Positions 36,276 to 62,943 are shown, numbered from the stretch's first letter. The stretch: DNA of 64,000 nucleotides from Macrostomum lignano (GCA_002269645.1 NIVC01000691.1:1-64000); one strand, 5' to 3'. The notes: generated by a model from the letters alone, not told the origin. Numbers and translations are program-made.

Positions 36276-36793
<518 letters not shown>

Positions 36794-39560: not shown

Positions 39561-39608
39561 CCTTCCGAGACTGCCCACCCTAACTCCTGAAAAGATTGAC
39601 AGACTCAC

Positions 39609-43239: not shown

Positions 43240-44665
43240 AAACCATAGACATAATCCGCCATTGTCTGACTCCAGAACCATAGACACAATCTGCCATTGT
43301 CTGACTCCAAAACCAATACAGACACAATCTGCCATTGTCTGACTCCAAAACCAATACAGACACAATCTGCCATTGTCTGACTCCAAAACCATAGACACAA
43401 TCTGCCATTGTCTGACTCCAGAACCATAGACACAATCTGCCATTGTCTGACTCCACAACCATAGACACAATCTGCCATTGTCTGACTCCAGAACCAATAC
43501 AGACACAATCTGCCATTGTCTGACTCCACAACCATAGACACAATCTGCCATTGTCTGACTCCACAACCATAGACACAATCTGCCATTGTCTGACTCCACA
43601 ACCATAGACACAATCTGCCATTGTCTGACTCCAGAACCAATACAGACACAATCTGCCATTGTCTGACTCCACAACCATAGACACAATCTGCCATTGTCTG
43701 ACTCCACAACCATAGACACAATCTGCCATTGTCTGACTCCACAACCATAGACACAATCTGCCATTGTTTAACTCCATAACCATAGACACAATCTGCCATT
43801 GTCTGACTCCAGAACCATAGACACAATCTGCCATTGTCTGACTCCACAACCAATACAGACACCATCTGCCATGTCTGACTCCAGAACCAATACAGACACA
43901 ATCTGCCATTGTCTGACTCCACAACCAATACAGACACAATCTGCCATTTTCTGACTCCGGAACCAATACACACACAATCTGCCATGTCTGACTCCAGAAA
44001 CAGACACAATCTGCCGTTGTCTGACTCCAGAACCATAGACACAATCTGCCATTGTCTGACTCCACAACCAATACAGACACAATCTGCCATTGTCTGACTC
44101 CGGAACCAATACACACACAATCTGCCATGTCTGACTCCAGAAACAGACACAATCTGGCATTGTCTGACTCCAGAACCATAGACACAATCTGCCATTGTCT
44201 GACTCCACAACCAATACAGACACAGTCTGCCATTGTTTAACTCCATAACCATAGAAACAATCTGCCATTGTCTGACTCCAGAACCATAGACACAATCTGC
44301 CATTGTCTGACTCCACAACCAATACAGACACAATCTGCCATTGTTTAACTCCATAACCATAGACACAATCTGCCATTGTCTGACTCCAGAACCATAGACA
44401 CAATCTGCCATTGTCTGACTCCACAACCAATACAGACACAATCTGCCATTGTTTAACTCCATAACCATAGACACAATCTGCCATTGTCTGACTCCAGAAC
44501 CATAGACACAATCTGCCATTGTCTGACTCCACAACCATAGACACAATCTGCCATTGTCTGACTCCACAACCAATACAGACACAATCTGCCATTGTTTAAC
44601 TCCATAACCATAGACACAATCTGCCATTGTCTGACTCCAAAACCATAGACAAAATCTGCCATTGT
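43240..44665. repeat. Satellite with 35-bp and 39-bp unit variants
   Basis: GACACAATCTGCCATTGTCTGACTCCAGAACCATA and the ...ACCAATACA variant. Confidence 0.95.
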
Positions 44666-45287
44666 GGAAGTCTATGACCATGCAATTTCATAGAATTCAT
44701 GGAGATATTGTGAAATATCGTCAGTTTGATGCTGCGAGCGTAAAAACGAAAAATGACTTTCTATATTTTGGTGATTAATTTTTCAATTGAGAATGGGTCT
44801 CTAGTGAAATTCACACAATTCAGAAATTTAGGATTCAGTATTTCGCTGTCAACCGCTTCTTTCACTTTCGTTAGTCAGGCAACCGACGAAGAAAAACCGC
44901 TACAGAGAGCCCCCTCTGTTCGTGACAGACTGCAGAACCGGGCCAATTACTATTTTGTCGAGTTTTATATTTCAAACACAACATGCAGCCAGAATCCAGT
45001 TCGGCATGTCGAATATTCATTACTACAGTTGCTATATACCAAATGATGAGTTGCTTAAATTCTGTCTACACGTGACTTCAAGGCGAAATTATATTCAGAA
45101 TGAAACATATAGGCCTACTATTGGGAAATATTTACGCTTTGAATAATAAAGACAGTTGCAAGGTTTTATAAGGGGCACATGGACAGTGAGAAAGGAAGAA
45201 TTCTGTAGAGCACATATATAGACACTAAAATCTCGTTTGCAATGCCATCGTGGGAAGCCAACTTTTAATAATTGAAAGTCAGCCAGC

Positions 45288-46217
<930 letters not shown>

Positions 46218-49043: not shown

Positions 49044-49435
49044 CAGGGTGTCCCATAAGTAACTTTACAACTTGTTTCGTGAATAACTCTGTGATTAATG
49101 CTTGGATCCCCACCAGATTTTAGCATAGGAAAATATATAGAAAAGGGATTTCTTTGACACCAAAAGCATGTTCGTACGTTAAAAAATACAGTCCGTTCAG
49201 GGTCCTTCGATGTGGCCACCGCCGTTTGTAAGGCAGGCCTTCAGCCGCCGCGGAAAAGTACAGCAGGGCTTTGGTAAGCGTCTCAGGCGAAATCTGGGCC
49301 TGATATGAACATGCTTTTGGTGTAAAAAAGTCCCTTTTCTATATATTTTCCTATGCTAAAATCTGGTTGGGATCCAAGCATTAATAACAAAGTTATTAAC
49401 GAAACAAGTTGTAAAGTTACTTATGGGACACCCTG
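49044..49435. mobile_element. Tc1/mariner-type MITE, about 390 bp
   Basis: Terminal inverted repeats of about 130 bp (49044-49177 and 49304-49435) begin CAGGGTGTCCCATAAGTAACTTTACAACTTGTTTCG. TA lies on both sides (one extra C at the left end). The paralogous site near 54041 carries a single TA and no insert. Confidence 0.9.
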
Positions 49436-50166
49436 TATTTTTTTCTACTGCATGAAGTCTCGTCAGAGAGCGAATGCTCACTATAACAGAAAAGCAGGTT
49501 GAGAATTAAAAAAGGAACAACATGCCCTGGGTAAAAGTTTTTAAAGCCGAAAAGTCGGCCTAAATCAATATACTGAGTAAAACGCACCATAAATAAAAAT
49601 AAAAATAGGGCTCTCATTTAAAACAAAATGTTTCATGAAAGTAGTTGTCTTAGAAACCCAGGAAGCATCAAAGTTAATAAAAGCGATGTGAATAATGTTC
49701 GTTCATGCACGTAGAAAAAAGAATAGAATAACAAATAAATCATATTTCACTAATTTCAGTTCACATAAGGCATTTCTTATAGAAAGTTATGGAAGGACCG
49801 TTTGCTTAAAAATTCCATTTACAAATTTTTGTGCATGATCCATTGGAAGTTCTTGGTAGGCCAAGCCAAAGGAACTCGCAGATCAAAAGGGAGAGTTTGG
49901 GTTAAAGCCCAAATGATTGGTTATTTGGGTTGCTGATGTCTTAGGCTACTTCAAGTAGATCATCGATAGTATATCTCCTAGATGGGCTTTCAGGATTGAT
50001 ATTTTTTCCCTGGGATACTAACAATACAGGGTAAAAATCTAAACTCAGGGTCAAAATATAGCGATTTCTAAGAAAAATATTCAAAATATAAACGTTTATT
50101 AAACACCATGCATATGCACAGTAAATTTAAGTGATAAAGGGATCACAAGTATCTAGTCGAAAAAAG

Positions 50167-53100
50167 TTAATACATACATTTGTGTGGGTGTGACGAAGAG
50201 TAAATTATTCGCTTGCAAGTAGGACAGGCAAGATTCGAACATTGTTTGCACCAGAGGTACGAATGGCCTTTGCGTGCCGGTTTCAATCCGTGCCCACAAT
50301 CTCCAACCAACTGCCGACTTGAATTTTGCGGCAAATCCATAGGCACAGATTCACTGCGGAAATCACTTTCTTGACGATGACCAGCAGAAGCAACGGAAGA
50401 ACCAGGATTGCCGACCAACGATCGCAGGTGATTAACAGCAATTCTTCGCTTATAAACAGACCAGTTTGTCGATTTGCTTCCCCAGATGCAATCTTCTAAC
50501 CACTTTGCATGTTTTGAGCAGTCAGAAGTACGAGTACTTGCAAAAACGCATCTATAACATACCGGACACTGAATGTCGAACTTGTCACGGCATCCATCTA
50601 CCAGCTTACGAAAAACATAAGTGGAAAAGCAATATTGGCACAGAGAACAAGAGCATGTCGGAAAATCAATTTTGTAAAGTTGGTCTATGTCTAGACGGCA
50701 GTTCGAACAATAAAATTTAGAAGCATCATCTTTGACAGCGGCAGATGGATCAGAAAAGCCCTTCAATCGCCTCCAGATAGACAGCTCGTGATCGAAGCGT
50801 TCAAGGATTGATGCCGATTCTGCCCCACCAAGCATACTTTGAATTCGAAGCCGTGCAAATTCGTAATGCTCATTCTCGATTCTTTTCTCAATAAAAGCAC
50901 GCGAACAGAAGCAAATAAAGTCACCGAGAACAAAATAATTGCGTCCGATTGCTTTCCAGAAGCAGTCCACGCATATTTTGCAGCCACAAACTTTTACTTC
51001 AAACGGATCAGTCTCCTCAACCTTGCGTCGGCATTTACAGCAAGTAAAAGAGACCACTAGTTCCGAACTTTCTGGCACAAATCCAATTTCCGTGGCGCTA
51101 TTTGAGAATTCAGTTGGCCTGGCAGATGTACCATTTACTTGGTCCGATGCAGCTCTGCAAGCTTGCTCATAGGAAAGGCCGTGATCCCTCATAAGTTTAT
51201 CAATTCTATCGTCAATTTGATGTCGCTGAAAATAAACTTCAGTAAGTGACATATTCCTTCCAACGCTCAAATGACTTGCCGGTTGGATTTCAAAACTGCA
51301 CACTTCACAAAAAGTGGCAGTTAATGAGTTTTTTAAAGTACACTGCGGACACTGAACAGCTTCTAAAGTTTCAGCATCGGTACCACCATCCGGCACACTG
51401 CTCGTTGCAGACTGCGCATCAGTGTTTCTAGCAGCAGCTTCATGACCTGCAGAATCACCGCTTCTATAATAATGAGCAGTTTCAGCTCCACAGAGAGGTC
51501 TGTTGTAATCATTAGCGACAGCTCCACCACTTGAATACTCGGGGGGCTGGGATCCTGCCGAAGAAGCACCTTGAATAGGAACAGCATCAAGCCGTTCATC
51601 ACAACCTTTACACTTTACTGAATGCGAGTCGTTCAGCAATGTGCATTTTACACACAGGACTTTGCCGGTAGAAGCCTTGACGCTCTCTACAACATTCGCC
51701 AGGCTGCTGGTCTTCGAGCACACTTGGCAGGTAAGGCGATAATTTTTTGTCGTGTCAGAGTTACAGCTGAACTCATTCATTGTAGTGCAATGAGCACATG
51801 TCCAAGTTAGACCAGTCACCTGGACTGGGTTGTGACGGCTGACGTATAAGCCTTCTTTCGTTTGGTTGACAGAAAAAACACGTTGAACCATTACTGGCTG
51901 GCCAGAATCGCGTTCTCTTATCGGCTGGCCACAATTGCGTTCTCTCATTGGCTGGCCGAAATTGCGTTTTCGCGATGGCTGGCCAGAAGCGCGCTTTTTC
52001 TTTGGCTGGTCAGAATTGCGTACTCTCATTGGCTGACCAGAATCGCATTCTCTCATTGGCTGACCAGAATAGCGCTCTCCAATTGGCTGGCCAGAATCGC
52101 ACTCTCTCATTGGCTGGCTAGAATCGTGTTCTCTCATTGGCTGGCCAGAATCTCGTTCTCTCATTGGCTGCCCAGAATCGCGTTCTCTCATTGGCTGACC
52201 AGAATCTCGTTCTCTCATTGGCTGGCCAGAATCGCGTTCTCTAATTGGCTGGCCAGAATCGCGCTCTCCAATTGGCTGGTCAGAATTGCACTCTCTCATT
52301 GGCTGACCAGAATCTCGTTATTTTATTGGCTGGCCAGAATCGCGCTCTTTAATTGGCTGGTCAGAATTGCGCTCTCTCATTGGCTGGCCAGAATCGCATT
52401 CTCCTATTAGCTGTCCAGAATTGCTTTTTCTCATTGGCTGACCGGAACTTTCAATGTGCATCTCACAAACAGTGACAGTTAATGGATTTTCTAAAGTACA
52501 TCTCGGGCACTGACCGGCTTCTAAAGTACCACCATCAGTACATCCATTCAGCCCATTGCTTGTTGCAGACTGTACATCAGAGGTATCGTCCCACTCGTCC
52601 AGCAACTGAAGCATTCTGTTAGTCTCGTCAACTCCGATCTCAGACTCCAACTCGAGCACTTGAATCTTCATCAACTCGCGAGCCTCAAAATCGCCAGTCC
52701 ACGCCACTCCGCACACCTGACATTCCAAGCGGCTGGGCAGAGATCGCACGAAGCTGCCAAAACAAGCTGAGCACAGCTCACAGCCGCAGCTACTCATGCT
52801 AGTCAGCTTCAGTTGTGGCATCTCATTGTTGCACTTGCTGCACCTGCATTTCAGCTTGCTAAGCAGCTCAGCAATGTCAAAGCAGGCAAAATCGCTGTTC
52901 TGAATCGCATTGATGAGATCAGAGTCGTTGAACTCTTTGAACTCGACCAGATCTTTGAGCTGGTAGAATCGCTCAGCCACGACTGGGTCGCAGCGGTCCA
53001 ATGCAGAGGGCAGCTTCAGCTCCACAACCTTATGATTCAAGTCTCCGTGACGCAGCTGGTAACACAGTCTGCACATGAAGCCGTAACGACACTCGGCATC

Positions 53101-53169
53101 GATGCACTTGAAGCTGCCAGTGTTGCGAAAGCAGATGTGGCACAGACTTGGGCCAGCTCGAGCGGCCAT
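50167..53169 (-). pseudogene. RNF31/HOIP-derived zinc-finger gene C (B-box, UBA-like, RING, partial NZF, 9-aa repeats, 3 NZF, 2 RING-like, IBR-like tail); one in-frame TAA splits it into 283-aa and 710-aa ORFs
   Basis: ORFs 53169-52318 and 52299-50167 are in the same frame. The junction reads AAA TAA CGA GAT TCT GGT CAG CCA ATG, where the repeat consensus is GAA/GAG (K-E-R-D-S-G-Q-P-M). It could be a pseudogene, two genes, or a base error. Confidence 0.7.
51895..52445. repeat. Coding 27-bp tandem repeat (about 21 units, MRERDSGQP)
   Basis: Unit TCTCATTGGCTGGCCAGAATCGCGTTC; each unit contains CAGCCAAT on the coding strand. Confidence 0.92.
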
Positions 53170-53361
53170 TCTGAGCTGAAGTGAGTTGAATAAAAATTAG
53201 AACATATTGTCACTGTAGCGATTGTCTACAACTAGACCTACTTGGGGAGCTGCCAGATGGCTAAAAGTGGAGTCAAACCGAAATGATACTGCCAGGACAG
53301 GTTGCTGCCCTCTGCCCTGTGCAAGGCTAGACTCCCCCACTAGCTAGGCTGATCAGAACGA

Positions 53362-56300
53362 TTCACGTCTCTCATACCGCAACATTTCTTTGCCCACAGC
53401 GCAAGCTTTTTGCGCCACACTCTATACTGTCTACTTATCAGTAGATGAACTCTGGCAGAAGCTGCGACTCCATTAGTGGGAGCTCCGACTCGTGCTTTCG
53501 AGAGTAGCAGAGGAACACAATAACTCAAGAATACGCTCGTAGTCGTGAAAGTGATAGTAAAGAGCGCGATTTTTTTGAAAATAATATCTATTTTTCAGAG
53601 AAAGGTCAGGGCAGAAAAATAGAATGTAACGAGTATAAGGGCTACAAGGTGAGGCTGGTGTGATCAAAATTACATCTGGGTAAGGAGATGGTGTGCTTTG
53701 GCGCTGAGGAACTCAATAAGGGACTCAAAAGCTAGATGAAGAATACAAAAAGGGCACTTAGGGCGTTGGGCTGATATCGGTCCTCCAAGCTTAATTAGCA
53801 CTTTTATGAACAGATTTTAGTGACACAGGTACGAAAGATAACACCTACTACTTAGAATATGGTACTTTCACAGAGAATTAATATGATCGGCAGATACAAT
53901 TCCTACGCGTCAATATATTGCAAAATGAGAAGGACAAAACGCATTTGTGTCTAAAATACATAATGCAACGTTTTTTTAAATAAAAATAGAAAAAACTACT
54001 GCTAATAAATCTATAGTGGATATAGGAAAACGATAAATAATATCTATTTTACTGCGTGAAGTCTCACCAGGGACAGGCACTGTAACAGAACACTAGGCTT
54101 AGAATAAAAAAAGGAACAATTCCTCTGGATAAAAATTTTCACACAGCCGACAAGTAGGCATTAATCGATTATACAACACATATGAATTATTTACTACAAT
54201 ATAACGCGCATCTCACGTATTTAAAAAATAAGTCTCATTTATAACAACAAGGCGTTTAATTAAAGTTGACCAACACTCAAAAAGCAACAAATTCAAACAA
54301 CGTGCCGATAATGTTCGTAGAAATGAGAAAATAATAACAAACTAATTATACTTCAAATTGCATTAGAAATTAATTATAGAAACTTGCTTTCGTTACATAA
54401 GAAAGGTTTTCTCAAGTTTTTGCAAAAAAATGGTTCATTTAGTGCTAGCCATTTGCGCATGATCAATTGAAAGTTGTTGTTAGGCCAAGCCAAAGGAACT
54501 CACAGATCAAAGAGAGAGTTTGGGTTAAAGACGGCTTAAATTGAGGCTTTGACGCCAAAACTGATAGGGGATGCTGATATTTTAGGCTGGATAGCAGGCT
54601 TTGGGGGCTGATTATTTTTTTGCTTTAACATCGTTTACTTAATAAGATATAACTATACAGAGTAGAAGCTTACATGTTTTTTAGTTTAAATATTTCATTC
54701 ATTATTTGATTATAGAAGCTATAAAGTTACCAATAGAATAACAACCGATATATAGCGAGTTCTTAGATAAGTAATCAAAATATAACATTGCTTATTAAAT
54801 ATCATGCATGCACAGTATATGTGTTCAAGTGATCACATCACAAGTATCTAGTCTTAAAAGTTAATACATACATTTGTGTAGGAATTTCGAAGTGTAAATT
54901 AGTCGCTTGCAAGTAGGACAGGCAAATTTGACACATTGAATGCACCAAAGGTAGCCGTTGTTTGCCGGTCTCAATCCGTGCCCACAATCTCCAACCAACT
55001 GCAGACTTGAATTTTGCGGCAAATCGCGATGCAAATATTCACTGCGGAAATCACCTAGACGAAGACCGCCAGAAGCAACAGAAGAACCAGGATTGCCGAC
55101 CAACGATAGCAGGTGATTAACAGCAATCCTTTGCTCATTAACAGACCAGAATGTTGGTTTGTGTCCCCAGATGCAATCTTCCAACCACGTAGCATGTTTT
55201 GAGCAGTCAGAAGTAATAGAAAAAAAGCATTTATAACAGACTGGACAACTTAGTTCATACTTGTCACGGCATCCATTGACCAGCTTGCGAACAACATAAG
55301 TGAAGAAGCAATCTTGGCACAGAGAACAAGAGCATGTCGGAGGATCAATCTTCTCAAATTGGTCTTTGTCTAGACGGCACTTCGAACAAGAAAATTTAGA
55401 AGCATCTTTGACAGCGGCAGATGGATCAGGAAGGCCCTCCCGTTGCCTCCAGTCAGACAGCCTCTGGTCGAAGCGCTCAAGGATGGACGCCGATTCTGCA
55501 TCACCGAGCTTTTGGCGAATTTGAAGCCGTGCGTCATCGTAATGCTCATTCTGATCTATTTTCACAAAACAAGCGCGTGAACAGTAGCAAAACAAGTCAC
55601 CAAGGTAAAAACCATTGTTTTCTATTAGTTTAATTGTTTTCCAAAAACAGTCCACGCATATTTTGCAGCCGCAAACTTTTATCTCAAACGGATCAGTCTC
55701 CTTAAACCTAAACTTGCATTTACAGCAAGCAAAAGAGACCACTGGTTCCGAGTTTTCTTGCACAATTCCAGCCATTTCTGTGGCGCTACTTAAGAATTCA
55801 GTTGGCCTGGCAGAAGTACCATTTATTCGGCCCGATACAGCTCTACAAGCTTGCTCATAGGAAAGGCCGTGATCCCTAATAAGTCTATCAACTGTATCGC
55901 CCATTTGTTGTCGCTCGAAATCAACTTCACCAGGTGACCTATTCCTTCCAACGCTCAAATGACTTGCCGGTTGGATTTCAAAATTGCACACTTCACAAAA
56001 ATTGGCAGTTAATGAGTTTTTTAAAGTACACTGCGGACACTGAACAGCTTCTAAAGTTTCACCATCAGTACCACCATCCGGCACACTGCTCGTTGCAGAC
56101 TGCGCATCAGTGTTTCTAGCAGCAGCTTCATGACCTGCAGAATCACCGCTTCTATAATAATGAGCAGTTTCAGCTCCACAGAGAGGTCTGTTGTAATCAT
56201 TAGCGACAGCTCCACCACTTGAATACTCAGAAGGCTGGGATCCTGCCGAAGAAGCACCTTGAATAGGAACAGCATCAAGCGGTTCATCACAACCATCACA

Positions 56301-56790
56301 TTTTACTGAATGTGAGTCGTTCAGCAATGTGCATTTTACACACAGGACTTTGCCGGTAGAAGCCTTAATGTTCTCAACGATATCCGTCAGGCTGCTGGTC
56401 TTCGAGCACACTTGGCAGGTAAGGCGATCATTTTTTGTTTTGTCAGAGTTACAGTTGAAGTCATTCTTTGTCGTGCAATGAGCACATGTCCAAGCTAGAC
56501 CAGTCGCCTGGCCAGGATTGTGACCGCTGACGCTTAAGTCTACATTCGCCGGGTCGACAGGATTAACATGTTGACCTCTGATTGGCTGGTCAAAATCGCA
56601 TTCTCTCATTGGTTGGCCAGAATCGCGCTCTCTCATTGGCTGGCCAGAATCACGTTCTATCGTTGGCTGGCCAGAATCGCGTTCTCTCATTGGCTGGCCA
56701 TAATCGCGTTTTCTCATTGGCTGGCCAGAATCGCGCTCTCTCATTGGCTGGCCAGAATCGCGCTCTCTCATTGGCTGACCAGAATCACGC
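53362..56790. repeat. Segmental duplication copy 2 carrying most of HOIP-like gene B and its 3' flank
   Basis: Direct repeat of 48390-52445; lacks the MITE. Confidence 0.9.
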
Positions 56791-57020
56791 TCCTTCGTTA
56801 GAAAGTTAGATTGACGCCCGTCACTCGATAGTCCAGAGTTTAAACCTGTATGAGTCGCATTTTGCTGAATATCAATTCGTTGATGATCTTTCCTGGCAGG
56901 ATGTCCATGCCAAATGTTATCGCAGCTTAAGCACAGCCGCTTCCTACTGCAACTAGCAACGGAGCACTCTTTTTCCGCTGGGTCGTCGCCGCAAAATTGG
57001 CACGGCTCGGGTTCTGACAT
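54861..57020 (-). CDS. RNF31/HOIP-derived zinc-finger protein B, single exon, 719 aa (HOIP-type B-box, 8 x 9-aa repeat, 3 NZF, 2 RING-like, IBR-like tail; no RING2/LDD)
   Basis: ATG at 57020 (the ORF track starts at an upstream TTG). B-box CQFCGDDPAEKECSVASCSRKRLCLSCDNIWHGHPARKDH. NZF-like motifs WTCAHCTTKN...CQVC, CVKCTLLN...CDGC and CPQCTLKN...CEVC. RING-like CSKCRLD...CSCSLCQDC...CPVC. Confidence 0.85.
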   Translation of the reverse strand: MSEPEPCQFCGDDPAEKECSVASCSRKRLCLSCDNIWHGHPARKDHQRIDIQQNATHTGLNSGLSSDGRQSNFLTKERDSGQPMRERDSGQPMRERDSGQPMRKRDYGQPMRERDSGQPTIERDSGQPMRERDSGQPMRECDFDQPIRGQHVNPVDPANVDLSVSGHNPGQATGLAWTCAHCTTKNDFNCNSDKTKNDRLTCQVCSKTSSLTDIVENIKASTGKVLCVKCTLLNDSHSVKCDGCDEPLDAVPIQGASSAGSQPSEYSSGGAVANDYNRPLCGAETAHYYRSGDSAGHEAAARNTDAQSATSSVPDGGTDGETLEAVQCPQCTLKNSLTANFCEVCNFEIQPASHLSVGRNRSPGEVDFERQQMGDTVDRLIRDHGLSYEQACRAVSGRINGTSARPTEFLSSATEMAGIVQENSEPVVSFACCKCKFRFKETDPFEIKVCGCKICVDCFWKTIKLIENNGFYLGDLFCYCSRACFVKIDQNEHYDDARLQIRQKLGDAESASILERFDQRLSDWRQREGLPDPSAAVKDASKFSCSKCRLDKDQFEKIDPPTCSCSLCQDCFFTYVVRKLVNGCRDKYELSCPVCYKCFFSITSDCSKHATWLEDCIWGHKPTFWSVNEQRIAVNHLLSLVGNPGSSVASGGLRLGDFRSEYLHRDLPQNSSLQLVGDCGHGLRPANNGYLWCIQCVKFACPTCKRLIYTSKFLHKCMY
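56570..56790. repeat. Coding 27-bp tandem repeat (8 units), same family as 51895-52445
   Basis: Same unit; encodes RERDSGQPM in gene B. Confidence 0.92.
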
Positions 57021-57287
57021 GCTTTGCAAGGTTTCAGGAAGGTATTAACTTTTATTATAGAGGCTATGGTTTTTTAAGAAAAGCAACGAAAAAATGTTAT
57101 TAACTGTACCATGCATAGAGACTACTCCAGTGTATTTTATGACATCACTACTAGTACTCTGATGGAGATAGGCTAATTACCTAAATATATAAGACAAGCG
57201 TATAACTGGAATGTTTCTGTTCTGACTATTAGTGCTTCTGGCAGTTAGTGTCAGAAGGCTTGCGATCAGATGCTAAGGCTCATGGGG

Positions 57288-57555
57288 AATCACTCAGATG
57301 CTAAGGCTCATGGGGAATCGCTCAGATGCTAAGGCTCATGGGGAATCGCTCAGATACCAAGGCTCATGGGGAATCGCTCAGATGCTAAGGCTCATGGGGA
57401 ATAGCTTAGATGCTAAGGCTAATGGGGAATCGCTCAGATGCTAAAGCTCATAGGGGAATCGCTCAGATGCTAAGGCTAATGGGGAATCGCTCAGATGCTG
57501 AGGCTCATGGGGAATCGTTCAGATTCTAAGGCTCATGAGCGAATCGCTCAGATGC
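57288..57555. repeat. Minisatellite, 28-bp unit, upstream of HOIP-like gene B
   Basis: GATGCTAAGGCTCATGGGGAATCGCTCA. Confidence 0.92.
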
Positions 57556-58608
57556 CAATTTAATTTAAATTAAATTGAAAAGAAACAAACGCAATAACAA
57601 TATAGTCAATTCTAAAATACATGTTCTGGAATATCTGGTATATTTGATTTCAATCAGAGAAATAAATTACAGACAAATTTGTGAAATAAAATATTTAATC
57701 TGACACAATTACCGGTAGCTGATTGGCAGCAAGAAAAGGCAAGTTTGCCTGCTTAGCAACATGTGATAACAAGACAAGTACATTAATGTTTTCCACCATT
57801 TTGACCTTTTGTAATAGCCGAGTAAATATCCAATCACTGAAGTCAGCATAATAGGAACCTATAGTAACCATATAACATTATACATAGTATATAAACTAGC
57901 AATCTAGTACCCCCCTTCGGGGCACCCAATAAGCAAGGAGCAAAAATTATTCATGCAAATTTATTAAAAAACCACATTTTCTTAAGAGCCAATTCCTTCT
58001 TCAGTTTCATAAATCCCCTTATTCTAGTAAGACTGTCACAGAAAGAGATGTATGCTATAAATATCTTTTTTCTAAAAAAAATAACTAAAACAGCAAAATA
58101 AAGCCTTCACTAAGATAGCAGGCATTTCCCCTACATAAAAAGCATCCCCAAGACCTCCTAACCCATAAATGAAAAAACCAAATAAATTAATGCTCAAAAA
58201 TAGCAATTGAAAGCAAAATAGAATTATCTCAAAGCTACAATTATTTAAGCATTTTCCCGCATAATAAATCATTTAAAATTATATTAGGAAGTACTTTATA
58301 ATAACGAAGCCATAGGAAGTTATTTCCAATTAAATAAGCATTGCTGAAAGCCTAGCTAGATCGATAGATAATTGAGCAGCAAAATAAAAACTAATAACAA
58401 ACTTTCGGTACGTGATGACAACAGCTATAGCACAGATGGACAAGATTGGTATTGGAATATCGCAACCTACTAAATTTGGAATGATATTACATGAAACTGA
58501 AAGAGTATATACGTCAGCATTTAATATCAACTGAATTATTTGATTAACAGGAAGCACTCTGATCCTTAGGATCAAAATCTGAATAAAAAAGCTGGAAAAT
58601 TTTACGTA

Positions 58609-59577
58609 CGAGGGGTGTCCAAAAAGTAGTGATACTTTTGCCTCTAGATCTTCACTGCATGCTTGAAATTCAATGAGTTTGGTGTCATTGGAAAGCGGAA
58701 AGTTTCATATTTTATTTGACTACTAAATATGACGAAATTCGAACTATTCAACAAGTTACAACTAGAAACATAGAACAAGGTCCACCATAGAGTTACAATG
58801 AAATCCACAAGACGCAACAGGTCAGCTCACAAAGTCCATGCTGGTCAGGCAGAGATGAATTGTTGATGGCGGGGTGTCGAGTCTATCCGCCATCTCACGA
58901 ATTGTCAGCCTGCAGTCTTCTTCTAGGAGGTCCAGAATCCGGTCAGCTAAGGCTTCTGAACCTGGTGCCAATGGTCTTCCTGACCTCTGCAAGTCAGCCA
59001 AATTTGTCCTCCCTGACTCAAAATTTTCGATTCAGCGGTACTACACCGTCATGCGACTTATCGCTTCAGCTCTATGAATGCTGCACAGATGACGGTGGAT
59101 CTCCGACCCACTCTTTCCGATGCTCCACAAAGTGAAAATTGCATGTCGCTGCCCTTCCTTGGAGTGCACATTCATAATTTGCATTTGTGCAGAAACTGCT
59201 CAGTCTTGAAAGAAGCACTCAATCAAGCTGGTACCTCAAAGAAATTTTGTCATGAATTTTAACCATAGACAGAAGCAGCACTTGTCAGAAATCTATTCAC
59301 TATTGACTCATCAATTATTCAGCTGCATTCATGCCAAAATTTGGCATGCAAACATGTCAAACAGGGTTTCCTTTTGATATGCACCATCTTTTGTAACTCT
59401 ATGTGCCTCAATGTGCCAAATAAGTTTGCGCAACTTCTTGTAAAATGAACATATAAACTCTAATTTGCAGTCAAATTAAAGATGAGACTTTCCGCTTTTT
59501 CAATGACACCAAACTCATTGAATCTCAAGCATGCAGTGAAGATCCAGAGGCAAAAGTATCACTACTTTTTGGACACC
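58609..59577 (-). mobile_element. Internally deleted mariner element with transposase HTH remnant
   Basis: Inverted repeats of about 95 bp (left TA|CGAGGGGTGTCCAAAAAGTAGTGATACTTTTGCC; right copy ends ...CTTTTTGGACACC, truncated). Minus-strand 59136-58822 translates GKSGSEIHRHLCSIHRAEAISRMTV*YR*IENFESGRTNLADLQRSGRP...ILDLLEEDCRLTIREMADRLDTPPSTIH, a mariner N-terminal HTH with stop codons. Confidence 0.88.
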
Positions 59578-59994
59578 ATTTTTGGAAACCAAAAAGCTTT
59601 GCTGCTCGTAGAACTTCAGTTTCCTCACTGGCTATATTTCAGAGACGTTTTTAGTGATATATCCAAGTGGCAAGTGGCAAATTTTACATAGAAGTAGCTT
59701 TGTCTCTAAGAAATAAGACAGATTTGAGTTTGAATTTTTTTTTAAATTTGTTTAGTTTAAAGTAGTGGGTTTATCAAATATTGAAACTGAGCTCAAGAAA
59801 TTAAATTACTGAAAATAGTTCTAAAGATGATGTGCTGGCAGGAATTTATTATAATGTAGAGAATATACGAGATTGAAGGTTCTAATGCGTGTTTAAGAAT
59901 ATATGTAGCCCATTGAGTAGGCGTATTTGTATATATCCGTTTCCAAATTACACTCATACTTGAAGTATTTTACACTCTTCATTGTTTCAATAAC

Positions 59995-62943
59995 CTAAAC
60001 CAGAGTTACTTTCATTTTGCTACTCCGCAGAGGTGGCACCGTTTTCTTCAGCCGCTCGCGATAAATTCTCACCTTCTCTCTCGCAGCAGAAGCAGGGTTG
60101 GAGGCGTTGACTTTCGGCAGGGCCAAACCAAACCTTCTGAACATCTCCAGCAGCTCATTTTCATTGGCAACATCTACCAAATCAAGCGCGTTTGCATTGA
60201 TGAGCTGAATTAGATACTCACGGTAGTGCCTGTCACATATACCTGGCTTGTTATGAGTAACTTTTTCGGTACAAGGACAGATTGTCAACTTTCCGTCCAT
60301 CTTCAAGTCAGGAAGCTCACAAGCTTTGCCAAACTTTGACCACACGTCGCTCACTTTGATCTTACTTTTCTTCAGCAAATCAAGTAGAGTCGTCTGTTTC
60401 ACTTGCTTCAAATTAAAGTAGCACTGGCGATGGTGGTGCACATGAAGTCCCTTAATCGGGCAGAAGTCGTGTGGTCTAATCTGAGGGCTTCGACAAAATG
60501 GACAGAATGAATGCCCACATCTGCAGTGAAACACAGGAACTCCAGATTTGGACACGCGTTGGTAGCAATGATTGCAATTTGGGCAAACCAAATCAAAAGT
60601 CAGAAGCTCCATCATCTGATCGTGCAGCTTTGCGTCAGTAGGCGAGAGGACTTGCTTCTGGGCAGCTACGTGCATTTTATTATCTCGTTTTTGACGAATG
60701 CGTGCTGCATGAACACGATAACTGTTGCAGTCCATCCGATAGTGATCAGTCCAGAACCCGAAGCATTGCTTGCAGACATCCTGTTTGCAATGTTTGCAGT
60801 AAATTTCGGACTGCCGAGTGTCCCTTTTCGGTAGTCCACTATTCCCATGGGGACAATAACCATTCGAAGTGTTTGATGGAACTGTCGAGGCATCTTTTGA
60901 GGCTTTTGGTTTTTTTCTTTTCGTGCCTGGGGCTTCGACCACTTCCCAACCTTCGTCGCTATTTTGGCTTGAATTATCTTCAAGGTGCGCCACTGCATAC
61001 TCCACAGTGTCAGAGCCAAGCACATCCGCCATTTCCATCAGCTGCATCCTCATGAAATCCCGACTGTCTTCATCATCGCACACACCCTGGCAGACAGGGC
61101 ACTGAATTCTGCTGCTTTTCAGATCAAGAAGAAATTTCCGAAAACACTCTGGACACATCTGGCACTCGCATGCTGCCATGGCAACAAGTTTGTGACGCGG
61201 TAACTCATTCGAACAGCGGTTGCACTTGCGACGCAGTTGGCTCATCAGAGCATAGTCTTCGAACGCCAGGCCGCCACACGACTCAATCGCAATCGCAAGG
61301 TCCGATTCAGAAAACTCTTTAAACTTGGGCATGCTTTTGACAACCAGAATTCTCTCTGCTACCCAGTCTTCCACTCTGAGCTGCGAAGCCAGGTTTTGAG
61401 CTCTATCGGACCATTCGGTAGAATCGCTTCCAGCCGCTCCGACTGCATCACTGGCGGCTGCTGCGGCTGCGGAGGTCAGCATGGACGCTGCAGCAACGGC
61501 TTCACTGCGAGCGACTGCGCCTCCTTTAGTGGCGCCGCCACTGAGTTCGGTAGTCTGTGAGCAAGCAGAGCAAATTGCAAGGCTATTTTCTGGCTGCGAT
61601 GGAGCCGGGTTCACCAGCGTGCAGTGCTTGCAGACCCAGTTGCCATCACTTTGAGAATTGTTTTCTTGGAAATTTTGAGAGGCTACTTTTGACGGAATAT
61701 TTGTTGCATGATGCTCATGTAGTTGCCGATTCTGTTCTTGCTGTTGCTCTCTCTGCTGCTGCTCTCTTTGCTGTTGCTCTTTCTGCTGCTGCTCTCTTTG
61801 CTGTTGCTCTCTCTGCTGTTGCTCTCTCTGCTGTTGCCCTCTCTGCTGTTGCTTTCTCTGCTGTTGCTCTCTCTGCTGTTGCTTTCTCTGCTGTTGCTCT
61901 CTCTGCTGTTGCTCTCTCTGCTGTTGCTCTCTCTGCTGTTGCTCTCTCTGCTGTTGCTCTCTCTGCTGTTGCTCTCTTTGCTGCAGCTCTCTCTGCTGTT
62001 GCTCTCTTTGCTGCAGCTCTCTCTGCTGTTGCTCTCTCTGCTGTTGCTCTCTCTGCTGTTGCTCTCTCTGCTGTTGCTCTCTCTGCTGTTTCTCTCTCTG
62101 CTGTTGCTCTCTCTGCTGTTGCTCTCTCTGCTGTTGCTCTCTCTGCTGTTGCTCTCTCTGCTGTTGCTCTCTCTGCTGTTTCTCTCTCTGCTGCTGCTCT
62201 CTCTGCCGTTGCTGAAGATTATTGAGATACCGTCTCTGCTGCTCATAAGAATCATTTGCTCTATCTTGACCTTGAAATTGACCTTGCTGATTTTTTACGT
62301 CTAAAAGTGAATTCTGGTGCGCATTCTTATTGCTTTTAAAATCTTGGTCACTACCATTAGTATCTGTACGGCCAACACTGTGAGCAGCATTGCCAGGCTT
62401 CTGATGAGCCGGTGCCCGAGAATCGAATGTTCCGCTCGATCCTCGATCAGACTCGCCAGGCGAAAGAGCTGACGAATAAGAAGCAGACTGAGCGGAACCA
62501 CCAGGTACTGTCGGTTTAGCAACACCTGTGCCAGAGTTTGGCCAATTATTGTTGCTACCCGCAGGAGGACTGGCTTCCTTCAACTCAATCGGAGGTGCTC
62601 CATCACTCTTGCCACAAACGCTGCATATCCTTCGCGTAGAATCCTCGTTGATGAAAGTGCAGAATTGGCACTGCCAGCCACCGCTGCTGCTAGAAGCAGG
62701 TGGCGGAGATGTTGGTTGAGGCGGTGGCGGTCGTTTTGGCGGCGTGCGGCCTGACTGGGGAGATCGTGAAGGACCAGCGGCCGGCCCGGGCTGGTAGGGT
62801 CTGGTCTGGTGATTTTTCCGATTCGGATGGTTGTGCCAAATCTGGTCGCAGCTTTTGCACAGCAGATTCCGGCTGCAGCCGGCTGTTTCGCACTGCACTT
62901 CGGCTGGGTAATCGCCACAAAAGCTACAGTCTACTGTAGCCAT
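59995..62943 (-). CDS. RNF31: RNF31/HOIP (LUBEL-like) RBR protein A, single exon, 982 aa; predicted catalytically dead
   Basis: B-box CSFCGDYPA...CKSCDQIWHNHPNRKNH; NZF WQCQFCTFIN...CSVC and WVCKHCTLVN...CSAC; UBA-like region; RING1 CNRCSNELPRHKLVAMAACECQMCPECF...CPVC (HOIP as recalled: CAVCGWALPHNRMQALTSCECTICPDCF); IBR; RING2 CPNC...FHCRCGHSFCPFC; LDD HHHRQCYFNL...GICDRHYREYLIQLINANALD (HOIP: GLCQAHYKEYLVSLINAHSLD). No PUB domain seen. Confidence 0.9.
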   Translation of the reverse strand: MATVDCSFCGDYPAEVQCETAGCSRNLLCKSCDQIWHNHPNRKNHQTRPYQPGPAAGPSRSPQSGRTPPKRPPPPQPTSPPPASSSSGGWQCQFCTFINEDSTRRICSVCGKSDGAPPIELKEASPPAGSNNNWPNSGTGVAKPTVPGGSAQSASYSSALSPGESDRGSSGTFDSRAPAHQKPGNAAHSVGRTDTNGSDQDFKSNKNAHQNSLLDVKNQQGQFQGQDRANDSYEQQRRYLNNLQQRQREQQQREKQQREQQQREQQQREQQQREQQQREQQQREKQQREQQQREQQQREQQQREQQQRELQQREQQQRELQQREQQQREQQQREQQQREQQQREQQQREQQQRKQQQREQQQRKQQQRGQQQREQQQREQQQREQQQKEQQQREQQQREQQQEQNRQLHEHHATNIPSKVASQNFQENNSQSDGNWVCKHCTLVNPAPSQPENSLAICSACSQTTELSGGATKGGAVARSEAVAAASMLTSAAAAAASDAVGAAGSDSTEWSDRAQNLASQLRVEDWVAERILVVKSMPKFKEFSESDLAIAIESCGGLAFEDYALMSQLRRKCNRCSNELPRHKLVAMAACECQMCPECFRKFLLDLKSSRIQCPVCQGVCDDEDSRDFMRMQLMEMADVLGSDTVEYAVAHLEDNSSQNSDEGWEVVEAPGTKRKKPKASKDASTVPSNTSNGYCPHGNSGLPKRDTRQSEIYCKHCKQDVCKQCFGFWTDHYRMDCNSYRVHAARIRQKRDNKMHVAAQKQVLSPTDAKLHDQMMELLTFDLVCPNCNHCYQRVSKSGVPVFHCRCGHSFCPFCRSPQIRPHDFCPIKGLHVHHHRQCYFNLKQVKQTTLLDLLKKSKIKVSDVWSKFGKACELPDLKMDGKLTICPCTEKVTHNKPGICDRHYREYLIQLINANALDLVDVANENELLEMFRRFGLALPKVNASNPASAAREKVRIYRERLKKTVPPLRSSKMKVTLV
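61735..62205. repeat. Coding 15-bp tandem repeat (QQREQ, about 30 units) in HOIP-like gene A
   Basis: Plus-strand unit CTGTTGCTCTCTCTG. Confidence 0.95.

What the first reader, a model, noticed from the sequence alone, without database searches (positions are those of the whole stretch)
50167..62943. Tandem array of three intronless HOIP-derived genes with reshuffled domains and no intact catalytic module
Seen: gene A has B-box, 2 NZF, UBA-like, RING1, IBR, RING2 and LDD. Gene B has a HOIP-type B-box, 9-aa repeats, 3 NZF, 2 RING-like domains and an IBR-like stub. Gene C has a different B-box, then a UBA-like/RING1 block homologous to gene A (EFKEFNDSDLINAIQ...CSKCNNEMPQLKLTSMSSCGCELCSACF versus KFKEFSESDLAIAIE...CNRCSNELPRHKLVAMAACECQMCPECF), a truncated copy of gene B's third NZF, and then the rest of gene B. 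All are on the same strand, about 1.7 and 3 kb apart. Known: HOIP/LUBEL builds Met1-linked ubiquitin chains in immune and cell-death signalling, NZFs bind ubiquitin, RING1 binds E2, and RNF31 is normally single-copy. Inference: a lineage-specific family of non-catalytic ubiquitin or E2-binding decoys or adaptors modulating linear-ubiquitin signalling, evolving by duplication and chimerism.
Basis: partly seen in the sequence, partly recalled or inferred. Interest (0 to 1): 0.8.

Follow-up and report, generated by a model that had tools for sequence, protein, structure and literature searches.

The report
Dead and truncated HOIP gene copies
Three neighbouring genes in the flatworm Macrostomum lignano are reshuffled copies of the linear-ubiquitin ligase HOIP that have lost the catalytic site, but they are only the tail of a larger gene cluster whose upstream members are still catalytically intact.

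Summary
The described ORFs and domain contents are real. The window is Macrostomum lignano contig NIVC01000691.1, bases 1-64000.

- **Gene A** is a full-length RNF31/HOIP paralogue whose catalytic Cys and His are both Val.
- **Gene B** is a truncated HOIP derivative: B-box, 9-aa repeats, three NZFs, two RING1 copies from an internal duplication, and an IBR. It has no RING2 or LDD.
- **Gene C** is a chimera of a B-box2/RING1 cassette, a partial NZF3 and a B copy.

Two things were missed. Gene C carries an in-frame TAA at 52318-52320. The array also continues upstream of the window with at least five more single-ORF HOIP genes. Three of these keep the GGC[ML]H active site, and the nearest starts 3.2 kb upstream of A.

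The same gene order recurs on two other contigs at 85-96% identity, which rules out a haplotig artefact. A and B ORFs are intact in all three copies, zinc ligands are invariant, and transcript-derived gene models exist. dN/dS is 0.45 for A, 0.65 for C and 0.88 for B. B and C show mosaic gene conversion.

Duplication and chimerism are shown. The decoy or adaptor function is only inferred. No publication on it was found.

The parts
59995..62943 (-). Gene A: single-ORF, full-length HOIP/RNF31 paralogue (982 aa) with a dead active site (pseudoligase).
   Evidence: ORF. phmmer to RNF31 structures 5edv (E=1.6e-17) and 4ljo (E=4.7e-14). A transcript-derived gene model of 984 aa lies on this contig. 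dN/dS is 0.44-0.48 between subgenome copies.
62806..62928 (-). Gene A B-box of HOIP type (aa 6-46).
   Evidence: 36% identity over 45 aa to the B-box of Owenia HOIP P0017, E=2e-9. 66% identity to the B-box of gene B. Pfam ANCHR-like_BBOX E=0.015, below threshold.
62605..62682 (-). Gene A NZF1 (aa 88-113).
   Evidence: Matches RNF31 NZF chains 7tv4_K (E=0.01) and 4owf_G (E=0.1). 50% identity over 30 aa to the Owenia HOIP NZF, E=2e-7.
61739..62213 (-). Gene A (REQQQ)n repeat: 15-nt unit, 31.7 copies, encoding a charged Q/E/R-rich spacer.
   Evidence: Tandem Repeats Finder.
61555..61647 (-). Gene A NZF2 (aa 433-463), with a long insert loop.
   Evidence: Read from the translation (W-x-C-x2-C ... 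C-x2-C). Weak Pfam Vps36-NZF-N hit, E=0.44.
61087..61377 (-). Gene A pre-RING1 helical segment ('UBA-like') plus RING1 (aa 523-619). All eight Cys ligands are present.
   Evidence: Aligned to RNF31 RING1 in 5edv and 7v8f and to HOIP orthologues.
60727..60855 (-). Gene A IBR (aa 697-739). The first ligand pair is C-x-H instead of C-x2-C.
   Evidence: dN/dS 0.26-0.38.
60493..60585 (-). Gene A RING2 (aa 787-817). The catalytic Cys is replaced by Val802 (codon 60538-60540) and the catalytic His by Val804.
   Evidence: MAFFT with 19 HOIP sequences. The column is at least 90% Cys in 149 sequences and Cys in 139 of 148 representatives. dN/dS 0.27-0.42.
59998..60492 (-). Gene A LDD-like C-terminal domain (aa 818-982). 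Zinc ligands are kept.
   Evidence: Aligned to RNF31 RING2-LDD 4ljo residues 18-203 and. dN/dS 0.43-0.47. Pfam PF18091 was not reported.
57266..57555 (.). 28-nt minisatellite, 10.3 copies, 240-530 nt upstream of the start of gene B.
54861..57029 (-). Gene B: single-ORF truncated HOIP derivative (722 aa from TTG; the first ATG is codon 4).
   Evidence: ORF. Collinear BLASTP to the intact HOIP paralogue P0013. hhalign 92% probability. B-type genes have transcript-derived models P0010 and P0011. dN/dS 0.87-0.89, yet the ORF is intact in all three loci.
56880..57002 (-). Gene B B-box (aa 10-50), A type.
   Evidence: 66% identity over 41 aa, E=8e-15.
56576..56786 (-). Gene B 9-aa repeat (RERDSGQPM): 27-nt unit, 7.8 copies.
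56289..56492 (-). Gene B NZF1-NZF2 tandem (aa 180-247).
   Evidence: 37% identity over 68 aa to the NZF pair of the intact HOIP P0013, E=1e-11.
55983..56039 (-). Gene B NZF3 (aa 331-349).
   Evidence: Pfam DZR E=0.018, below threshold.
55569..55727 (-). Gene B RING1-like copy a (aa 435-487), followed by a HOIP-type linker helix.
   Evidence: hhalign alignment 1 to HOIP RING1 plus helix. BLASTP E=2e-4. Cys ligands are invariant in 5 sequences.
55227..55388 (-). Gene B RING1-like copy b (aa 548-601), an internal duplicate of copy a.
   Evidence: hhalign alignment 2. Copies a and b are mutual best hits at 88 bits. Cys ligands are invariant.
54870..54986 (-). Gene B terminal IBR-like stub (aa 682-720). 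The protein ends here, without RING2 or LDD.
   Evidence: hhalign alignment 2 places it on the HOIP IBR. Ligands are conserved, except the last Cys in one of five copies. It is the only moderately confident part of the AF2 model.
52318..53169 (-). Gene C, first ORF (283 aa): B-box2, pre-RING1 segment, RING1, helix, partial NZF3 and the start of the 9-aa repeats.
   Evidence: 45% identity over 193 aa to the N-terminus of the upstream gene P0004, E=2e-51. 33% identity over 184 aa to A. B-box2 matches the CPEB1 ZZ domain at E=8e-4.
52459..52581 (-). Gene C truncated copy of B's NZF3 region (aa 197-237). The fourth Cys is missing.
   Evidence: 61% identity over 41 aa, E=2e-11.
51895..52447 (-). 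Gene C 9-aa repeat: 27-nt unit, 20.5 copies, spanning the stop codon.
52318..52320 (-). In-frame TAA that interrupts gene C. The base at 52320 is T on the gene's strand, and the 99.9%-identical copy on contig NIVC01000110.1 has G there (GAA, Glu).
50167..52299 (-). Gene C, second ORF (710 aa): repeats plus a near-complete copy of B from the NZF pair to the IBR stub.
   Evidence: 70% protein identity over 702 aa. 85% DNA identity over 2070 nt, extending 110 nt past the stop.
48650..54950 (.). A tract of about 6.3 kb (gene C plus flanks) that is 99.9% identical to contig NIVC01000110.1, flanked by 88-93% identity. Either recent gene conversion or assembly chimerism.
   Evidence: 8 differences in total.

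Best explanation
**What is shown.** The three ORFs are the distal, non-catalytic end of a tandem array of at least eight single-ORF RNF31/HOIP paralogues in the flatworm Macrostomum lignano. The window holds A, B and C. The upstream 23 kb holds five more ORFs:
- a 1325-aa double-RBR gene;
- a 1114-aa chimera;
- a 667-aa RBR gene;
- a 533-aa canonical HOIP;
- a 117-aa B-box-only ORF.

Gene A keeps the whole HOIP layout: B-box, NZF, spacer, NZF, pre-RING1 helices, RING1, IBR, RING2 and LDD. Val replaces both the thioester Cys and the catalytic His, so A cannot pass ubiquitin through RING2.

Gene B keeps the B-box, three NZFs, a duplicated RING1-helix cassette and an IBR, and stops there.

Gene C is a B copy whose B-box was replaced by a B-box2/RING1/helix cassette. 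The same cassette heads an upstream gene.

**What is inferred.** A, B and C are maintained pseudoligases or adaptors. Their NZFs would bind ubiquitin chains. Their RING1 cassettes would bind E2~Ub or allosteric ubiquitin. They would then scaffold, sequester or compete with the active paralogues encoded next door, tuning linear-ubiquitin signalling.

**Evolution.** The family evolves by tandem duplication, cassette exchange, repeat-number change and gene conversion between paralogues and subgenomes. The copy of C in this window is either freshly inactivated or carries a base-call error.
For: **Identity and active site**
- The organism and contig are identified.
- A is a HOIP homologue.
- The Cys-to-Val and His-to-Val changes occur in all three A copies. 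The column is Cys in 139 of 148 family representatives.
- Neighbours keep GGC[ML]H and pass the Pfam thresholds for IBR, IBR_1 and PF18091.

**Origin of B and C**
- B descends from HOIP.
- C is a chimera.

**Evidence of maintenance**
- The same gene order recurs on three contigs at 85-96% identity.
- Under neutral substitution an intact ORF would survive one branch with P of about 0.002-0.004. A and B are intact in all three copies.
- All zinc ligands in the RING1a, RING1b and IBR stub of the B/C family are invariant except the last IBR Cys, which is Phe in one copy.
- dN/dS is 0.44-0.48 for A, with RING2 at 0.27-0.42 and LDD at 0.43-0.47.
- The GenBank gene models are RNA-seq-derived, and models exist for A-type and B-type genes, including A in this window.
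- A second cluster on another contig again pairs an active HOIP with a Cys-less A-like gene and a B-box/NZF/IBR-only gene. This suggests the active-plus-dead combination is old and retained.
Against: - No binding, activity or expression-response data exist.
- dN/dS for B is 0.87-0.89, close to neutral.
- C carries a nonsense codon here and a frameshift in its near-identical copy.
- A, B and C fall below every Pfam threshold, and the AF2 model of B's C-terminal half failed (pLDDT 39.6). Folded, functional RING1 and IBR domains in B and C are therefore inferred from ligand conservation and a 92% hhalign probability only.
- The dN/dS estimates are blurred by gene conversion.
- The annotated model for B and C in this window is a B-to-C join that looks like a mapping artefact. 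Separate transcription of B and C here is therefore not shown.
Confidence: 0.55

Rival explanations
1. B and C, and perhaps A, are decaying relics of duplication: transcribed but functionless pseudogenes drifting neutrally in a duplication-prone neopolyploid genome.
For: - dN/dS for B is 0.87-0.89 and for C 0.64-0.65.
- C has a nonsense codon in the window and a frameshift on contig 110.
- All four SNVs in the C coding sequence between those two copies change the protein.
- No catalytic module remains, and no Pfam hit is significant.
Against: - ORFs of 700-1050 codons are intact for B in all three loci and for C in L002, despite 10-15% nucleotide divergence. The neutral expectation per branch is about 0.002-0.004.
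- All indels between copies are in frame except one homopolymer base.
- Every zinc-ligand Cys and His but one is invariant while surrounding residues vary.
- dN/dS is below 1 in most zinc-finger blocks of B and C and 1 or more in most linker segments.
- Each lesion in C is private to one of two 99.9%-identical copies, so their common ancestor was intact.
Confidence: 0.17
2. B and C are hypervariable bait or sensor proteins under diversifying selection. They mimic HOIP surfaces and are kept polymorphic by conflict with pathogen effectors or by sexual conflict.
For: - Divergence between subgenome copies is 10-21% across A's 3' half, B and most of C. The genome mean is 2.2%, or 1.1% in coding sequence (PMC10733133). 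The adjacent active 533-aa HOIP differs by only 1.2%.
- Linker dN/dS exceeds 1 in several segments.
- Gene conversion among paralogues is mosaic.
- Repeat copy number differs between copies.
Against: - dS is elevated too (0.13-0.18). Much of the divergence therefore reflects old coalescence or conversion from diverged paralogues, not adaptive change.
- No site-model test was possible with 5-6 recombining sequences.
- No expression or infection data exist.
Confidence: 0.15
3. A, B and C are still active E3 ligases through a non-RBR route, for example RING1 acting as a classical RING E3, or another Cys in A's RING2 (Cys793) serving as the acceptor.
For: - A keeps a complete RING1 and an extra Cys in 'CPNCNHCYQ'.
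- B and C each carry two or three RING1 cassettes with full ligand sets.
Against: - The catalytic column is Cys in 139 of 148 family representatives, and the catalytic His is also lost in A.
- From established knowledge, RBR RING1 domains hold E2~Ub in an open, non-discharging state (HOIP/UbcH5B~Ub structure 5EDV).
- Cys793 has no counterpart in any aligned HOIP.
Confidence: 0.08
4. The array is an assembly artefact: uncollapsed haplotypes or mis-joined copies.
For: - Mlig_3_7 is known to contain chimeric scaffolds (36% of its length) and mis-represented paralogues (PMC10733133).
- A 6.3-kb tract is 99.9% identical between two contigs.
Against: - Within the window, B and C differ by 15% in DNA and have different N-termini.
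- A, B and C have distinct architectures.
- The same six-gene order is found on three contigs that differ by 4-15%. This fits the three known subgenomes and does not fit duplicated haplotigs.
Confidence: 0.03

Closest known systems
RNF31/HOIP (vertebrate LUBAC catalytic subunit) and Drosophila LUBEL
   Same: Gene A has the same domain order: B-box, NZF, pre-RING1 helices, RING1, IBR, RING2 and LDD. It aligns to human RNF31 structures 5edv and 4ljo. The neighbouring 533-aa gene is a clear orthologue, E=6e-93 to RNF31 of other animals, with Pfam PF18091.
   Different: - A lacks the thioester Cys and the catalytic His (Val/Val), and no PUB domain was detected.
- B and C lack RING2 and LDD entirely.
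- The genes are single-ORF and in a tandem array of at least eight. RNF31 is usually a single, multi-exon gene (general knowledge). M. lignano genes average 4.9 introns (PMC5730564).
Pseudoenzymes of the ubiquitin system, such as the RING 'pseudoligases' described in the TRIM family (bioRxiv 10.1101/2024.10.15.614675)
   Same: These are enzyme folds retained under selection without catalytic competence. They are presumed to act by binding or scaffolding.
   Different: Here the dead copies are RBR-type and HOIP-derived, and they sit beside their active paralogues. The literature searches run here turned up no described RBR or HOIP pseudoligase family.
Spider LUBEL/RNF31 paralogue with Cys replaced by Ser (P0054, Caerostris darwini; member P0271, Trichonephila)
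   Same: It is the only other full-length family representative in the 148-cluster survey that lacks the catalytic Cys (GGSLL).
   Different: It is an independent lineage with Ser rather than Val. No array or domain reshuffling was examined.
Second M. lignano HOIP cluster on contig NIVC01001484.1 (L005)
   Same: It holds an active HOIP followed by a Cys-less A-like gene (P0021, 'KSTADHIAC') and a B-box/NZF/coiled-coil/IBR-only gene.
   Different: - Identity to the window genes is only about 39%.
- The active HOIP there has introns.
- It has no 9-aa repeats and no duplicated RING1.

Membership tests
RNF31/HOIP (RBR-LDD linear-ubiquitin ligase): gene A | RING1-IBR-RING2 in order, homologous to RNF31. 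| tested here: met
   phmmer to 5edv_A E=1.6e-17, with RING1 at 572-629 and IBR-RING2-LDD at 710-955. MAFFT with 19 HOIPs.
RNF31/HOIP (RBR-LDD linear-ubiquitin ligase): gene A | Catalytic Cys (human C885) and His (H887) in RING2. | tested here: not met
   A has Val802 and Val804 ('SKSGVPVFHC'), the same in all three subgenome copies. The column is Cys in 139 of 148 representatives and at least 90% Cys in A3.
RNF31/HOIP (RBR-LDD linear-ubiquitin ligase): gene A | C-terminal LDD (Pfam PF18091). | tested here: inconclusive
   A aligns to the RNF31 RING2-LDD crystal chains over 783-955 at E=4.7e-14, with zinc ligands kept. PF18091 was not reported by hmmscan even at E up to 1.
RNF31/HOIP (RBR-LDD linear-ubiquitin ligase): gene A | N-terminal B-box-type zinc finger and NZF ubiquitin-binding fingers. 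| tested here: met
   B-box E=2e-9 and NZF E=2e-7 to Owenia HOIP. RNF31 NZF chains at E=0.01-0.14.
RNF31/HOIP (RBR-LDD linear-ubiquitin ligase): gene A | PUB domain and UBA pair (vertebrate HOIP). | tested here: not met
   No PF09409 or PF16678 hit in A. Only the short pre-RING1 helical segment is conserved.
RNF31/HOIP (RBR-LDD linear-ubiquitin ligase): gene A | Makes Met1-linked chains. | not testable with these tools
   Needs an in vitro ubiquitination assay.
RBR E3 ligases: genes B and C | RING1 homologous to an RBR RING1. | tested here: met
   hhalign of the B family against a HOIP profile gives 92% probability, E=6e-7, for each of the two RING1-like copies. BLASTP to P0013 gives E=2e-4, collinear. 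For C's N-terminal cassette, E=7e-25 to A. The PDB profile search alone was not significant, E=0.34.
RBR E3 ligases: genes B and C | IBR after RING1. | tested here: inconclusive
   The terminal stub aligns to the HOIP IBR in hhalign alignment 2 and its ligands are conserved. There is no Pfam IBR hit, and the AF2 model is only locally confident.
RBR E3 ligases: genes B and C | RING2 with a catalytic Cys. | tested here: not met
   The proteins end 2 residues after the IBR-like stub. No RING2 or LDD is present in any of 5 B/C sequences.
Pseudoenzyme (maintained, catalytically dead paralogue): gene A | Homologous to an enzyme, lacks catalytic residues, and is kept by purifying selection. | tested here: met
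   Homology. Loss of Cys and His. dN/dS 0.44-0.48, with RING2 0.27-0.42. The ORF is intact in three copies against a neutral P of about 0.002 per branch. A transcript-derived model exists.
Processed pseudogene or dead duplicate: gene C in this window | Disabling lesion in the reading frame. | tested here: inconclusive
   A TAA lies at 52318-52320. It is a single G-to-T difference from a 99.9%-identical copy, and the L002 copy is an intact 1049-aa ORF. Raw reads are needed to tell a real mutation from a base-call error.

The most novel reading that the evidence does not exclude
The HOIP array may be a fast-recombining, hypervariable locus. Its non-catalytic members (B, C and perhaps A) would be decoys or sensors that mimic the ubiquitin-, E2- and partner-binding surfaces of the active HOIP paralogues. 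Conflict with pathogen effectors or mating partners would keep them diverse. That would make it an invertebrate 'integrated decoy' system built from a linear-ubiquitin ligase.
Probability: 0.15. Interest if true: 0.75.

Novelty: new variant of a known kind. Interest (0 to 1): 0.5.

Why it matters
HOIP is the only known E3 ligase that makes Met1-linked ubiquitin chains, and it is normally a single gene. This species has a dozen or more HOIP-derived genes. They include natural catalytic-dead full-length copies, RING1/IBR-only truncations, cassette chimeras and a protein with two complete RBR modules.

Together these form a natural dissection of the HOIP domains. They could show what the NZF, RING1 and LDD modules do without catalysis, and how pseudoligases regulate their active paralogues.

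M. lignano supports RNAi and transgenesis, so the hypotheses can be tested. If the genes prove to be drifting duplicates, the locus would remain a clear example of domain shuffling and gene conversion in a neopolyploid genome.

Tried and rejected
- **Pfam scan of A, B and C.** Nothing reached threshold, so domain calls rest on PDB phmmer, BLASTP and hhalign.
- **phmmer of B against the PDB, and a B/C profile against the PDB.** No significant hit; RNF31 RING1 scored only E=0.34.
- **AlphaFold2 of B's C-terminal half with a 4-sequence alignment.** Mean pLDDT was 39.6 and pTM 0.19, which is unusable, so no fold search was run.
- **First protein search with full-length A.** It was swamped by Q-rich low-complexity hits. 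I used the RBR-LDD part for the exhaustive search instead.
- **The annotated 725-aa model as a real B-to-C splice.** Rejected. The junction lies in 18 identical bases without an in-frame GT-AG, and the same join appears in L002 (P0011). It is probably a mapping artefact.
- **Uncollapsed haplotypes.** Rejected on 4-15% divergence and three-fold synteny.
- **Expression data by gene ID.** Searches of papers and one supplement set found nothing.
- **Literature on Macrostomum RNF31.** None found.
- **D936-to-Q in A's LDD as extra evidence of inactivity.** Dropped, because that position varies (D/N) across orthologues.
- **Alignment A3.** It was too large to export, so the survey was redone by pairwise alignment.
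- **Look-up of P0256.** No contig is on record.
Full report
**Source of the window.** The best protein hits to gene A are Macrostomum lignano proteins. The last 144 bases of the window are identical to the end of locus L001, which is contig NIVC01000691.1 (GCA_002269645.1) positions 63857-87162, reverse-complemented. The window is therefore bases 1-64000 of that contig. L001 read on its plus strand is the sequence directly upstream of gene A.

**Check of the observation.** One search lists the three minus-strand ORFs at the stated coordinates: A 59995-62943 (982 aa), B 54861-57029 (722 aa), and C as two ORFs, 52318-53169 (283 aa) and 50167-52299 (710 aa). The two C ORFs are in the same frame. 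A TAA at 52318-52320, inside the 9-aa repeat array, separates them. The spacers are 2965 and 1691 nt. The repeats are real: 27-nt units with 7.8 copies in B and 20.5 in C, and 15-nt units with 31.7 copies in A. No Pfam model reaches threshold for any of the three proteins.

**Gene A.**
- phmmer against PDB sequences gives human RNF31/HOIP as the top hits. 5edv scores E=1.6e-17, with RING1 at 572-629 and IBR-RING2-LDD at 710-955. 4ljo scores E=4.7e-14 for RING2-LDD. The RNF31 RING1 chain and NZF chains also match.
- The B-box and first NZF match those of a full-length annelid HOIP in the same order, E=2e-9 and 2e-7.
- In a MAFFT alignment with human HOIP, eight orthologues and the M. lignano paralogues, the catalytic motif GGC(885)MH(887)F reads SGVPVF in A. 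It reads the same in both other subgenome copies, SGYSVF in the upstream chimera P0004, and STADHI in P0021.
- In a 149-sequence alignment the column is at least 90% Cys. By pairwise alignment, 139 of 148 family representatives have Cys. The exceptions are mostly fragments, plus P0021 and a spider paralogue with Ser.
- A is therefore a full-length HOIP paralogue that cannot use the RBR thioester step.
- The 'UBA-like' block gave no UBA hit. It is the helical segment that HOIP orthologues carry just before RING1.

**Gene B.**
- The B-box is 66% identical to A's.
- Against the intact neighbouring HOIP (P0013), the NZF pair matches at 37% over 68 aa, E=1e-11. The stretch NZF3, helices, RING1 and linker helix is collinear at 21% over 277 aa, E=2e-4.
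- hhalign of five B/C C-terminal halves against a 36-sequence HOIP RBR profile gives two alternative alignments, each at 92% probability and E of about 6e-7. One puts RING-like copy a plus helix on HOIP RING1 plus helix. The other puts copy b on RING1 and the terminal stub on the IBR.
- The two copies are each other's best match at 88 bits, which indicates an internal duplication.
- All presumed zinc ligands are invariant across the five sequences, except the last IBR Cys in one copy.
- The protein ends two residues after the IBR-like stub, with no RING2 or LDD.
- Direct PDB searches were not significant, and the AF2 model was unusable.

**Gene C.**
- Residues 1-192 are B-box2, the pre-RING1 segment, RING1 and a helix. 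They are 45% identical (E=2e-51) to the N-terminus of the upstream gene P0004 and 33% identical (E=7e-25) to A.
- Residues 197-237 copy B's NZF3 region at 61% identity, without the fourth Cys.
- The rest is 70% identical to B in protein and 85% in DNA over 2070 nt. The duplicated unit extends into the 3' flank.

**The array is larger and includes active copies.** L001 carries, in order:

| Position in L001 | Product | Content |
|---|---|---|
| 913-4890 | 1325 aa | Two complete RBR-LDD modules, both with GGCLH; Pfam PF18091, IBR_1 and IBR each hit twice |
| 9962-13306 | 1114 aa (P0004) | C-type N-cassette, Q-repeats, then an A-type dead RBR-LDD |
| 15226-17229 | 667 aa | NZF, RBR with GGCLH, short LDD, NZF |
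| 19444-21045 | 533 aa (P0013) | AKGGCMHF; Pfam IBR, IBR_1 and PF18091 |
| 22686-23039 | 117 aa | B-box only |

P0013's best hits are RNF31 of molluscs, fishes and mammals at 39-42% identity, E down to 6e-93. It starts 3.2 kb upstream of A. Genes A, B and C follow the 117-aa ORF. 'No intact catalytic module' is therefore true only of the three genes inside the window.

**Not an artefact.** Two other contigs carry the same order:
- L002 (NIVC01000762.1) holds 666 aa, 533 aa, 112 aa, A, B and C.
- L003 (NIVC01000110.1) holds 533 aa, A, B and C.

Both are collinear with this locus at 85-96% DNA identity. This fits the three subgenomes (S, L1, L2) reported for the Mlig_3_7 assembly (PMC10733133). 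Within the window, B and C differ by 15%.

**Selection.** Nei-Gojobori dN/dS between subgenome copies:

| Gene | dN/dS |
|---|---|
| 533-aa HOIP | 0.15 |
| B-box-only ORF | 0.17 |
| 667-aa gene | 0.31 |
| A | 0.44-0.48 |
| C | 0.64-0.65 |
| B | 0.87-0.89 |

- By domain, A's IBR, RING2 and LDD give 0.26-0.47, while most linkers in A, B and C are near or above 1.
- In a substitution-only neutral simulation, an ORF of this length survives one branch with P of about 0.002-0.004. A and B are nevertheless intact in all three loci, and C is intact in L002.
- This argues against simple decay. It suggests constraint on the zinc scaffolds with relaxed or diversifying change elsewhere.

**Unusual divergence and mosaicism.**
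- Mismatch between this locus and L002 is 1-2% over the 533-aa and 667-aa coding regions and over C's N-cassette. It is 10-21% over A's 3' half, B and most of C.
- The genome means are 2.2% overall and 1.1% in coding sequence (PMC10733133).
- dS is also high, at 0.13-0.18. Adaptive protein change alone therefore cannot explain the divergence.
- A six-sequence B/C matrix is star-like at 84-88%, with segment-wise switches. For example, B here is 96% identical to C here in one 350-nt block and 91% identical to L002's C in another. This indicates repeated gene conversion among paralogues and subgenomes.

**Status of gene C in this window.**
- A 6.3-kb tract (window about 54950 to 48650) is 99.9% identical to L003, with 8 differences, and is flanked by 88-93% identity.
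- Among the differences, 52320 is T here (TAA) and G there (GAA).
- L003 in turn has a one-base deletion in a C6 run that shifts the frame. P0012 is that L003 product.
- L002's C is an uninterrupted 1049-aa ORF.
- Each lesion is private to one copy. The gene was therefore intact until very recently, or the lesions are assembly errors. Raw reads are needed to decide.

**Transcription and introns.**
- The GenBank annotation of Mlig_3_7 derives from a genome-guided RNA-seq assembly, and the species averages 4.9 introns per gene (PMC5730564).
- Transcript-derived single-exon models exist for A-type genes (P0001 in this window; P0002), for B-type genes (P0010) and for the 533-aa gene.
- In this window B and C are covered by one 725-aa model. 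It equals B residues 1-664 joined to C's last 60 residues. The junction lies in 18 identical bases without an in-frame GT-AG, and the same join occurs in L002 (P0011). I regard it as a mapping artefact, so separate transcripts for B and C here are not demonstrated.
- The uniformly single-exon state of the cluster, set against an intron-containing HOIP in the second cluster, suggests a retrocopy origin followed by tandem duplication. This is an inference.

**Genome-wide context.** A second cluster on contig NIVC01001484.1 holds:
- an intron-containing 720-aa HOIP with UBA_HOIP, IBR and LDD hits;
- the Cys-less A-like P0021;
- an 801-aa B-box/2xNZF/coiled-coil/IBR-like gene;
- a 354-aa NZF/coiled-coil gene.

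P0021 has a near-identical copy on yet another contig. The pairing of active and dead HOIP genes is therefore recurrent and old: RING1-cassette identity between the clusters is about 39%. B-type proteins were found only in M. lignano. No paper mentions Macrostomum together with RNF31, or these gene IDs.

**Interpretation.**
- Shown: ancestry, loss of the catalytic residues or module, chimerism, gene conversion, ORF maintenance and the presence of active neighbours.
- Inferred from established HOIP biology: NZFs bind ubiquitin, and RING1 binds E2~Ub (the RING1-IBR region also binds an allosteric ubiquitin in 5EDV). On that basis A, B and C would act as non-catalytic binders that scaffold or compete with the active paralogues.
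- The main rival is drift towards pseudogenes. It is strongest for this window's copy of C.
- A more novel variant, hypervariable decoys under conflict, fits the divergence pattern but remains untested.

Noticed in passing
L001:913-4890 (contig NIVC01000691.1, about 82.3-86.3 kb, upstream of the window): A 1325-aa single ORF carries two complete RBR-LDD modules, both with GGCLH. They are joined by an E/R/Q-rich repeat. Pfam IBR, IBR_1 and PF18091 each hit twice. I do not know of any E3 ligase with two RBR catalytic units.
   Followed up: partly
L001:15226-17229 and L002:556-2556: A 667-aa paralogue keeps the catalytic Cys and His, but its LDD is short and divergent ('HHGSEC' in place of 'HHPRDC'). 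It also has an extra C-terminal NZF. It may have a different linkage specificity.
   Followed up: no
window 48650-54950 versus L003 12330-18615: A 6.3-kb tract is 99.9% identical between two otherwise 88-93% identical paralogous loci. This is either recent gene conversion or assembly chimerism. All four SNVs in the coding sequence are non-synonymous or nonsense.
   Followed up: yes
window 50167-57032: The GenBank-type gene model here (725 aa) joins B residues 1-664 to the last 60 residues of C, across about 4.7 kb. The same join is annotated at the paralogous locus (P0011). There is no in-frame GT-AG at the junction.
   Followed up: yes
window 57266-57555: A 28-nt minisatellite (10.3 copies, 90% matches) lies just upstream of the start of gene B.
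   Followed up: no
L005 (contig NIVC01001484.1, 138014-160107): A second HOIP cluster holds an intron-containing active HOIP, the Cys-less A-like P0021, an 801-aa B-box/NZF/coiled-coil/IBR-like gene and a 354-aa NZF/coiled-coil gene.
   Followed up: partly
P0054 / P0271 (spiders Caerostris darwini and Trichonephila inaurata): A spider RNF31/LUBEL paralogue has Ser and Leu in place of the catalytic Cys and His ('GGSLL'). This is an independent loss in another lineage.
   Followed up: partly
window 30191-33644 (-) and 39605-40588 (-): Two paralogous Cys-loop ligand-gated ion-channel genes lie here, with Pfam Neur_chan_LBD E=1e-48 to 5e-50 and the start of the membrane domain. They look like another local duplication.
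   Followed up: partly
window 13665-14177 (+); 3303-8842 (-); 18174-20140 (-): These are a homeodomain exon (PF00046, E=4e-21), filamin-repeat exons (PF00630), and a RING/B-box/coiled-coil-like ORF pair. The last looks TRIM-like by eye but has no Pfam hit.
   Followed up: partly
window 35146-36869, 43145-46277, 25015-25891, 10661-11312: Long microsatellite and minisatellite tracts generate spurious ORFs of 150-480 aa in several frames. One is a roughly 1.5-kb array encoding 'MADCVYGxGVRQWQIVS' units at 43145-44681.
   Followed up: no
window A, B, C versus L002 and L003: Repeat copy number differs between subgenome copies. B's 9-aa array is clearly longer in L003, C's is longer in L002, and A's REQQQ array also varies.
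   Followed up: partly
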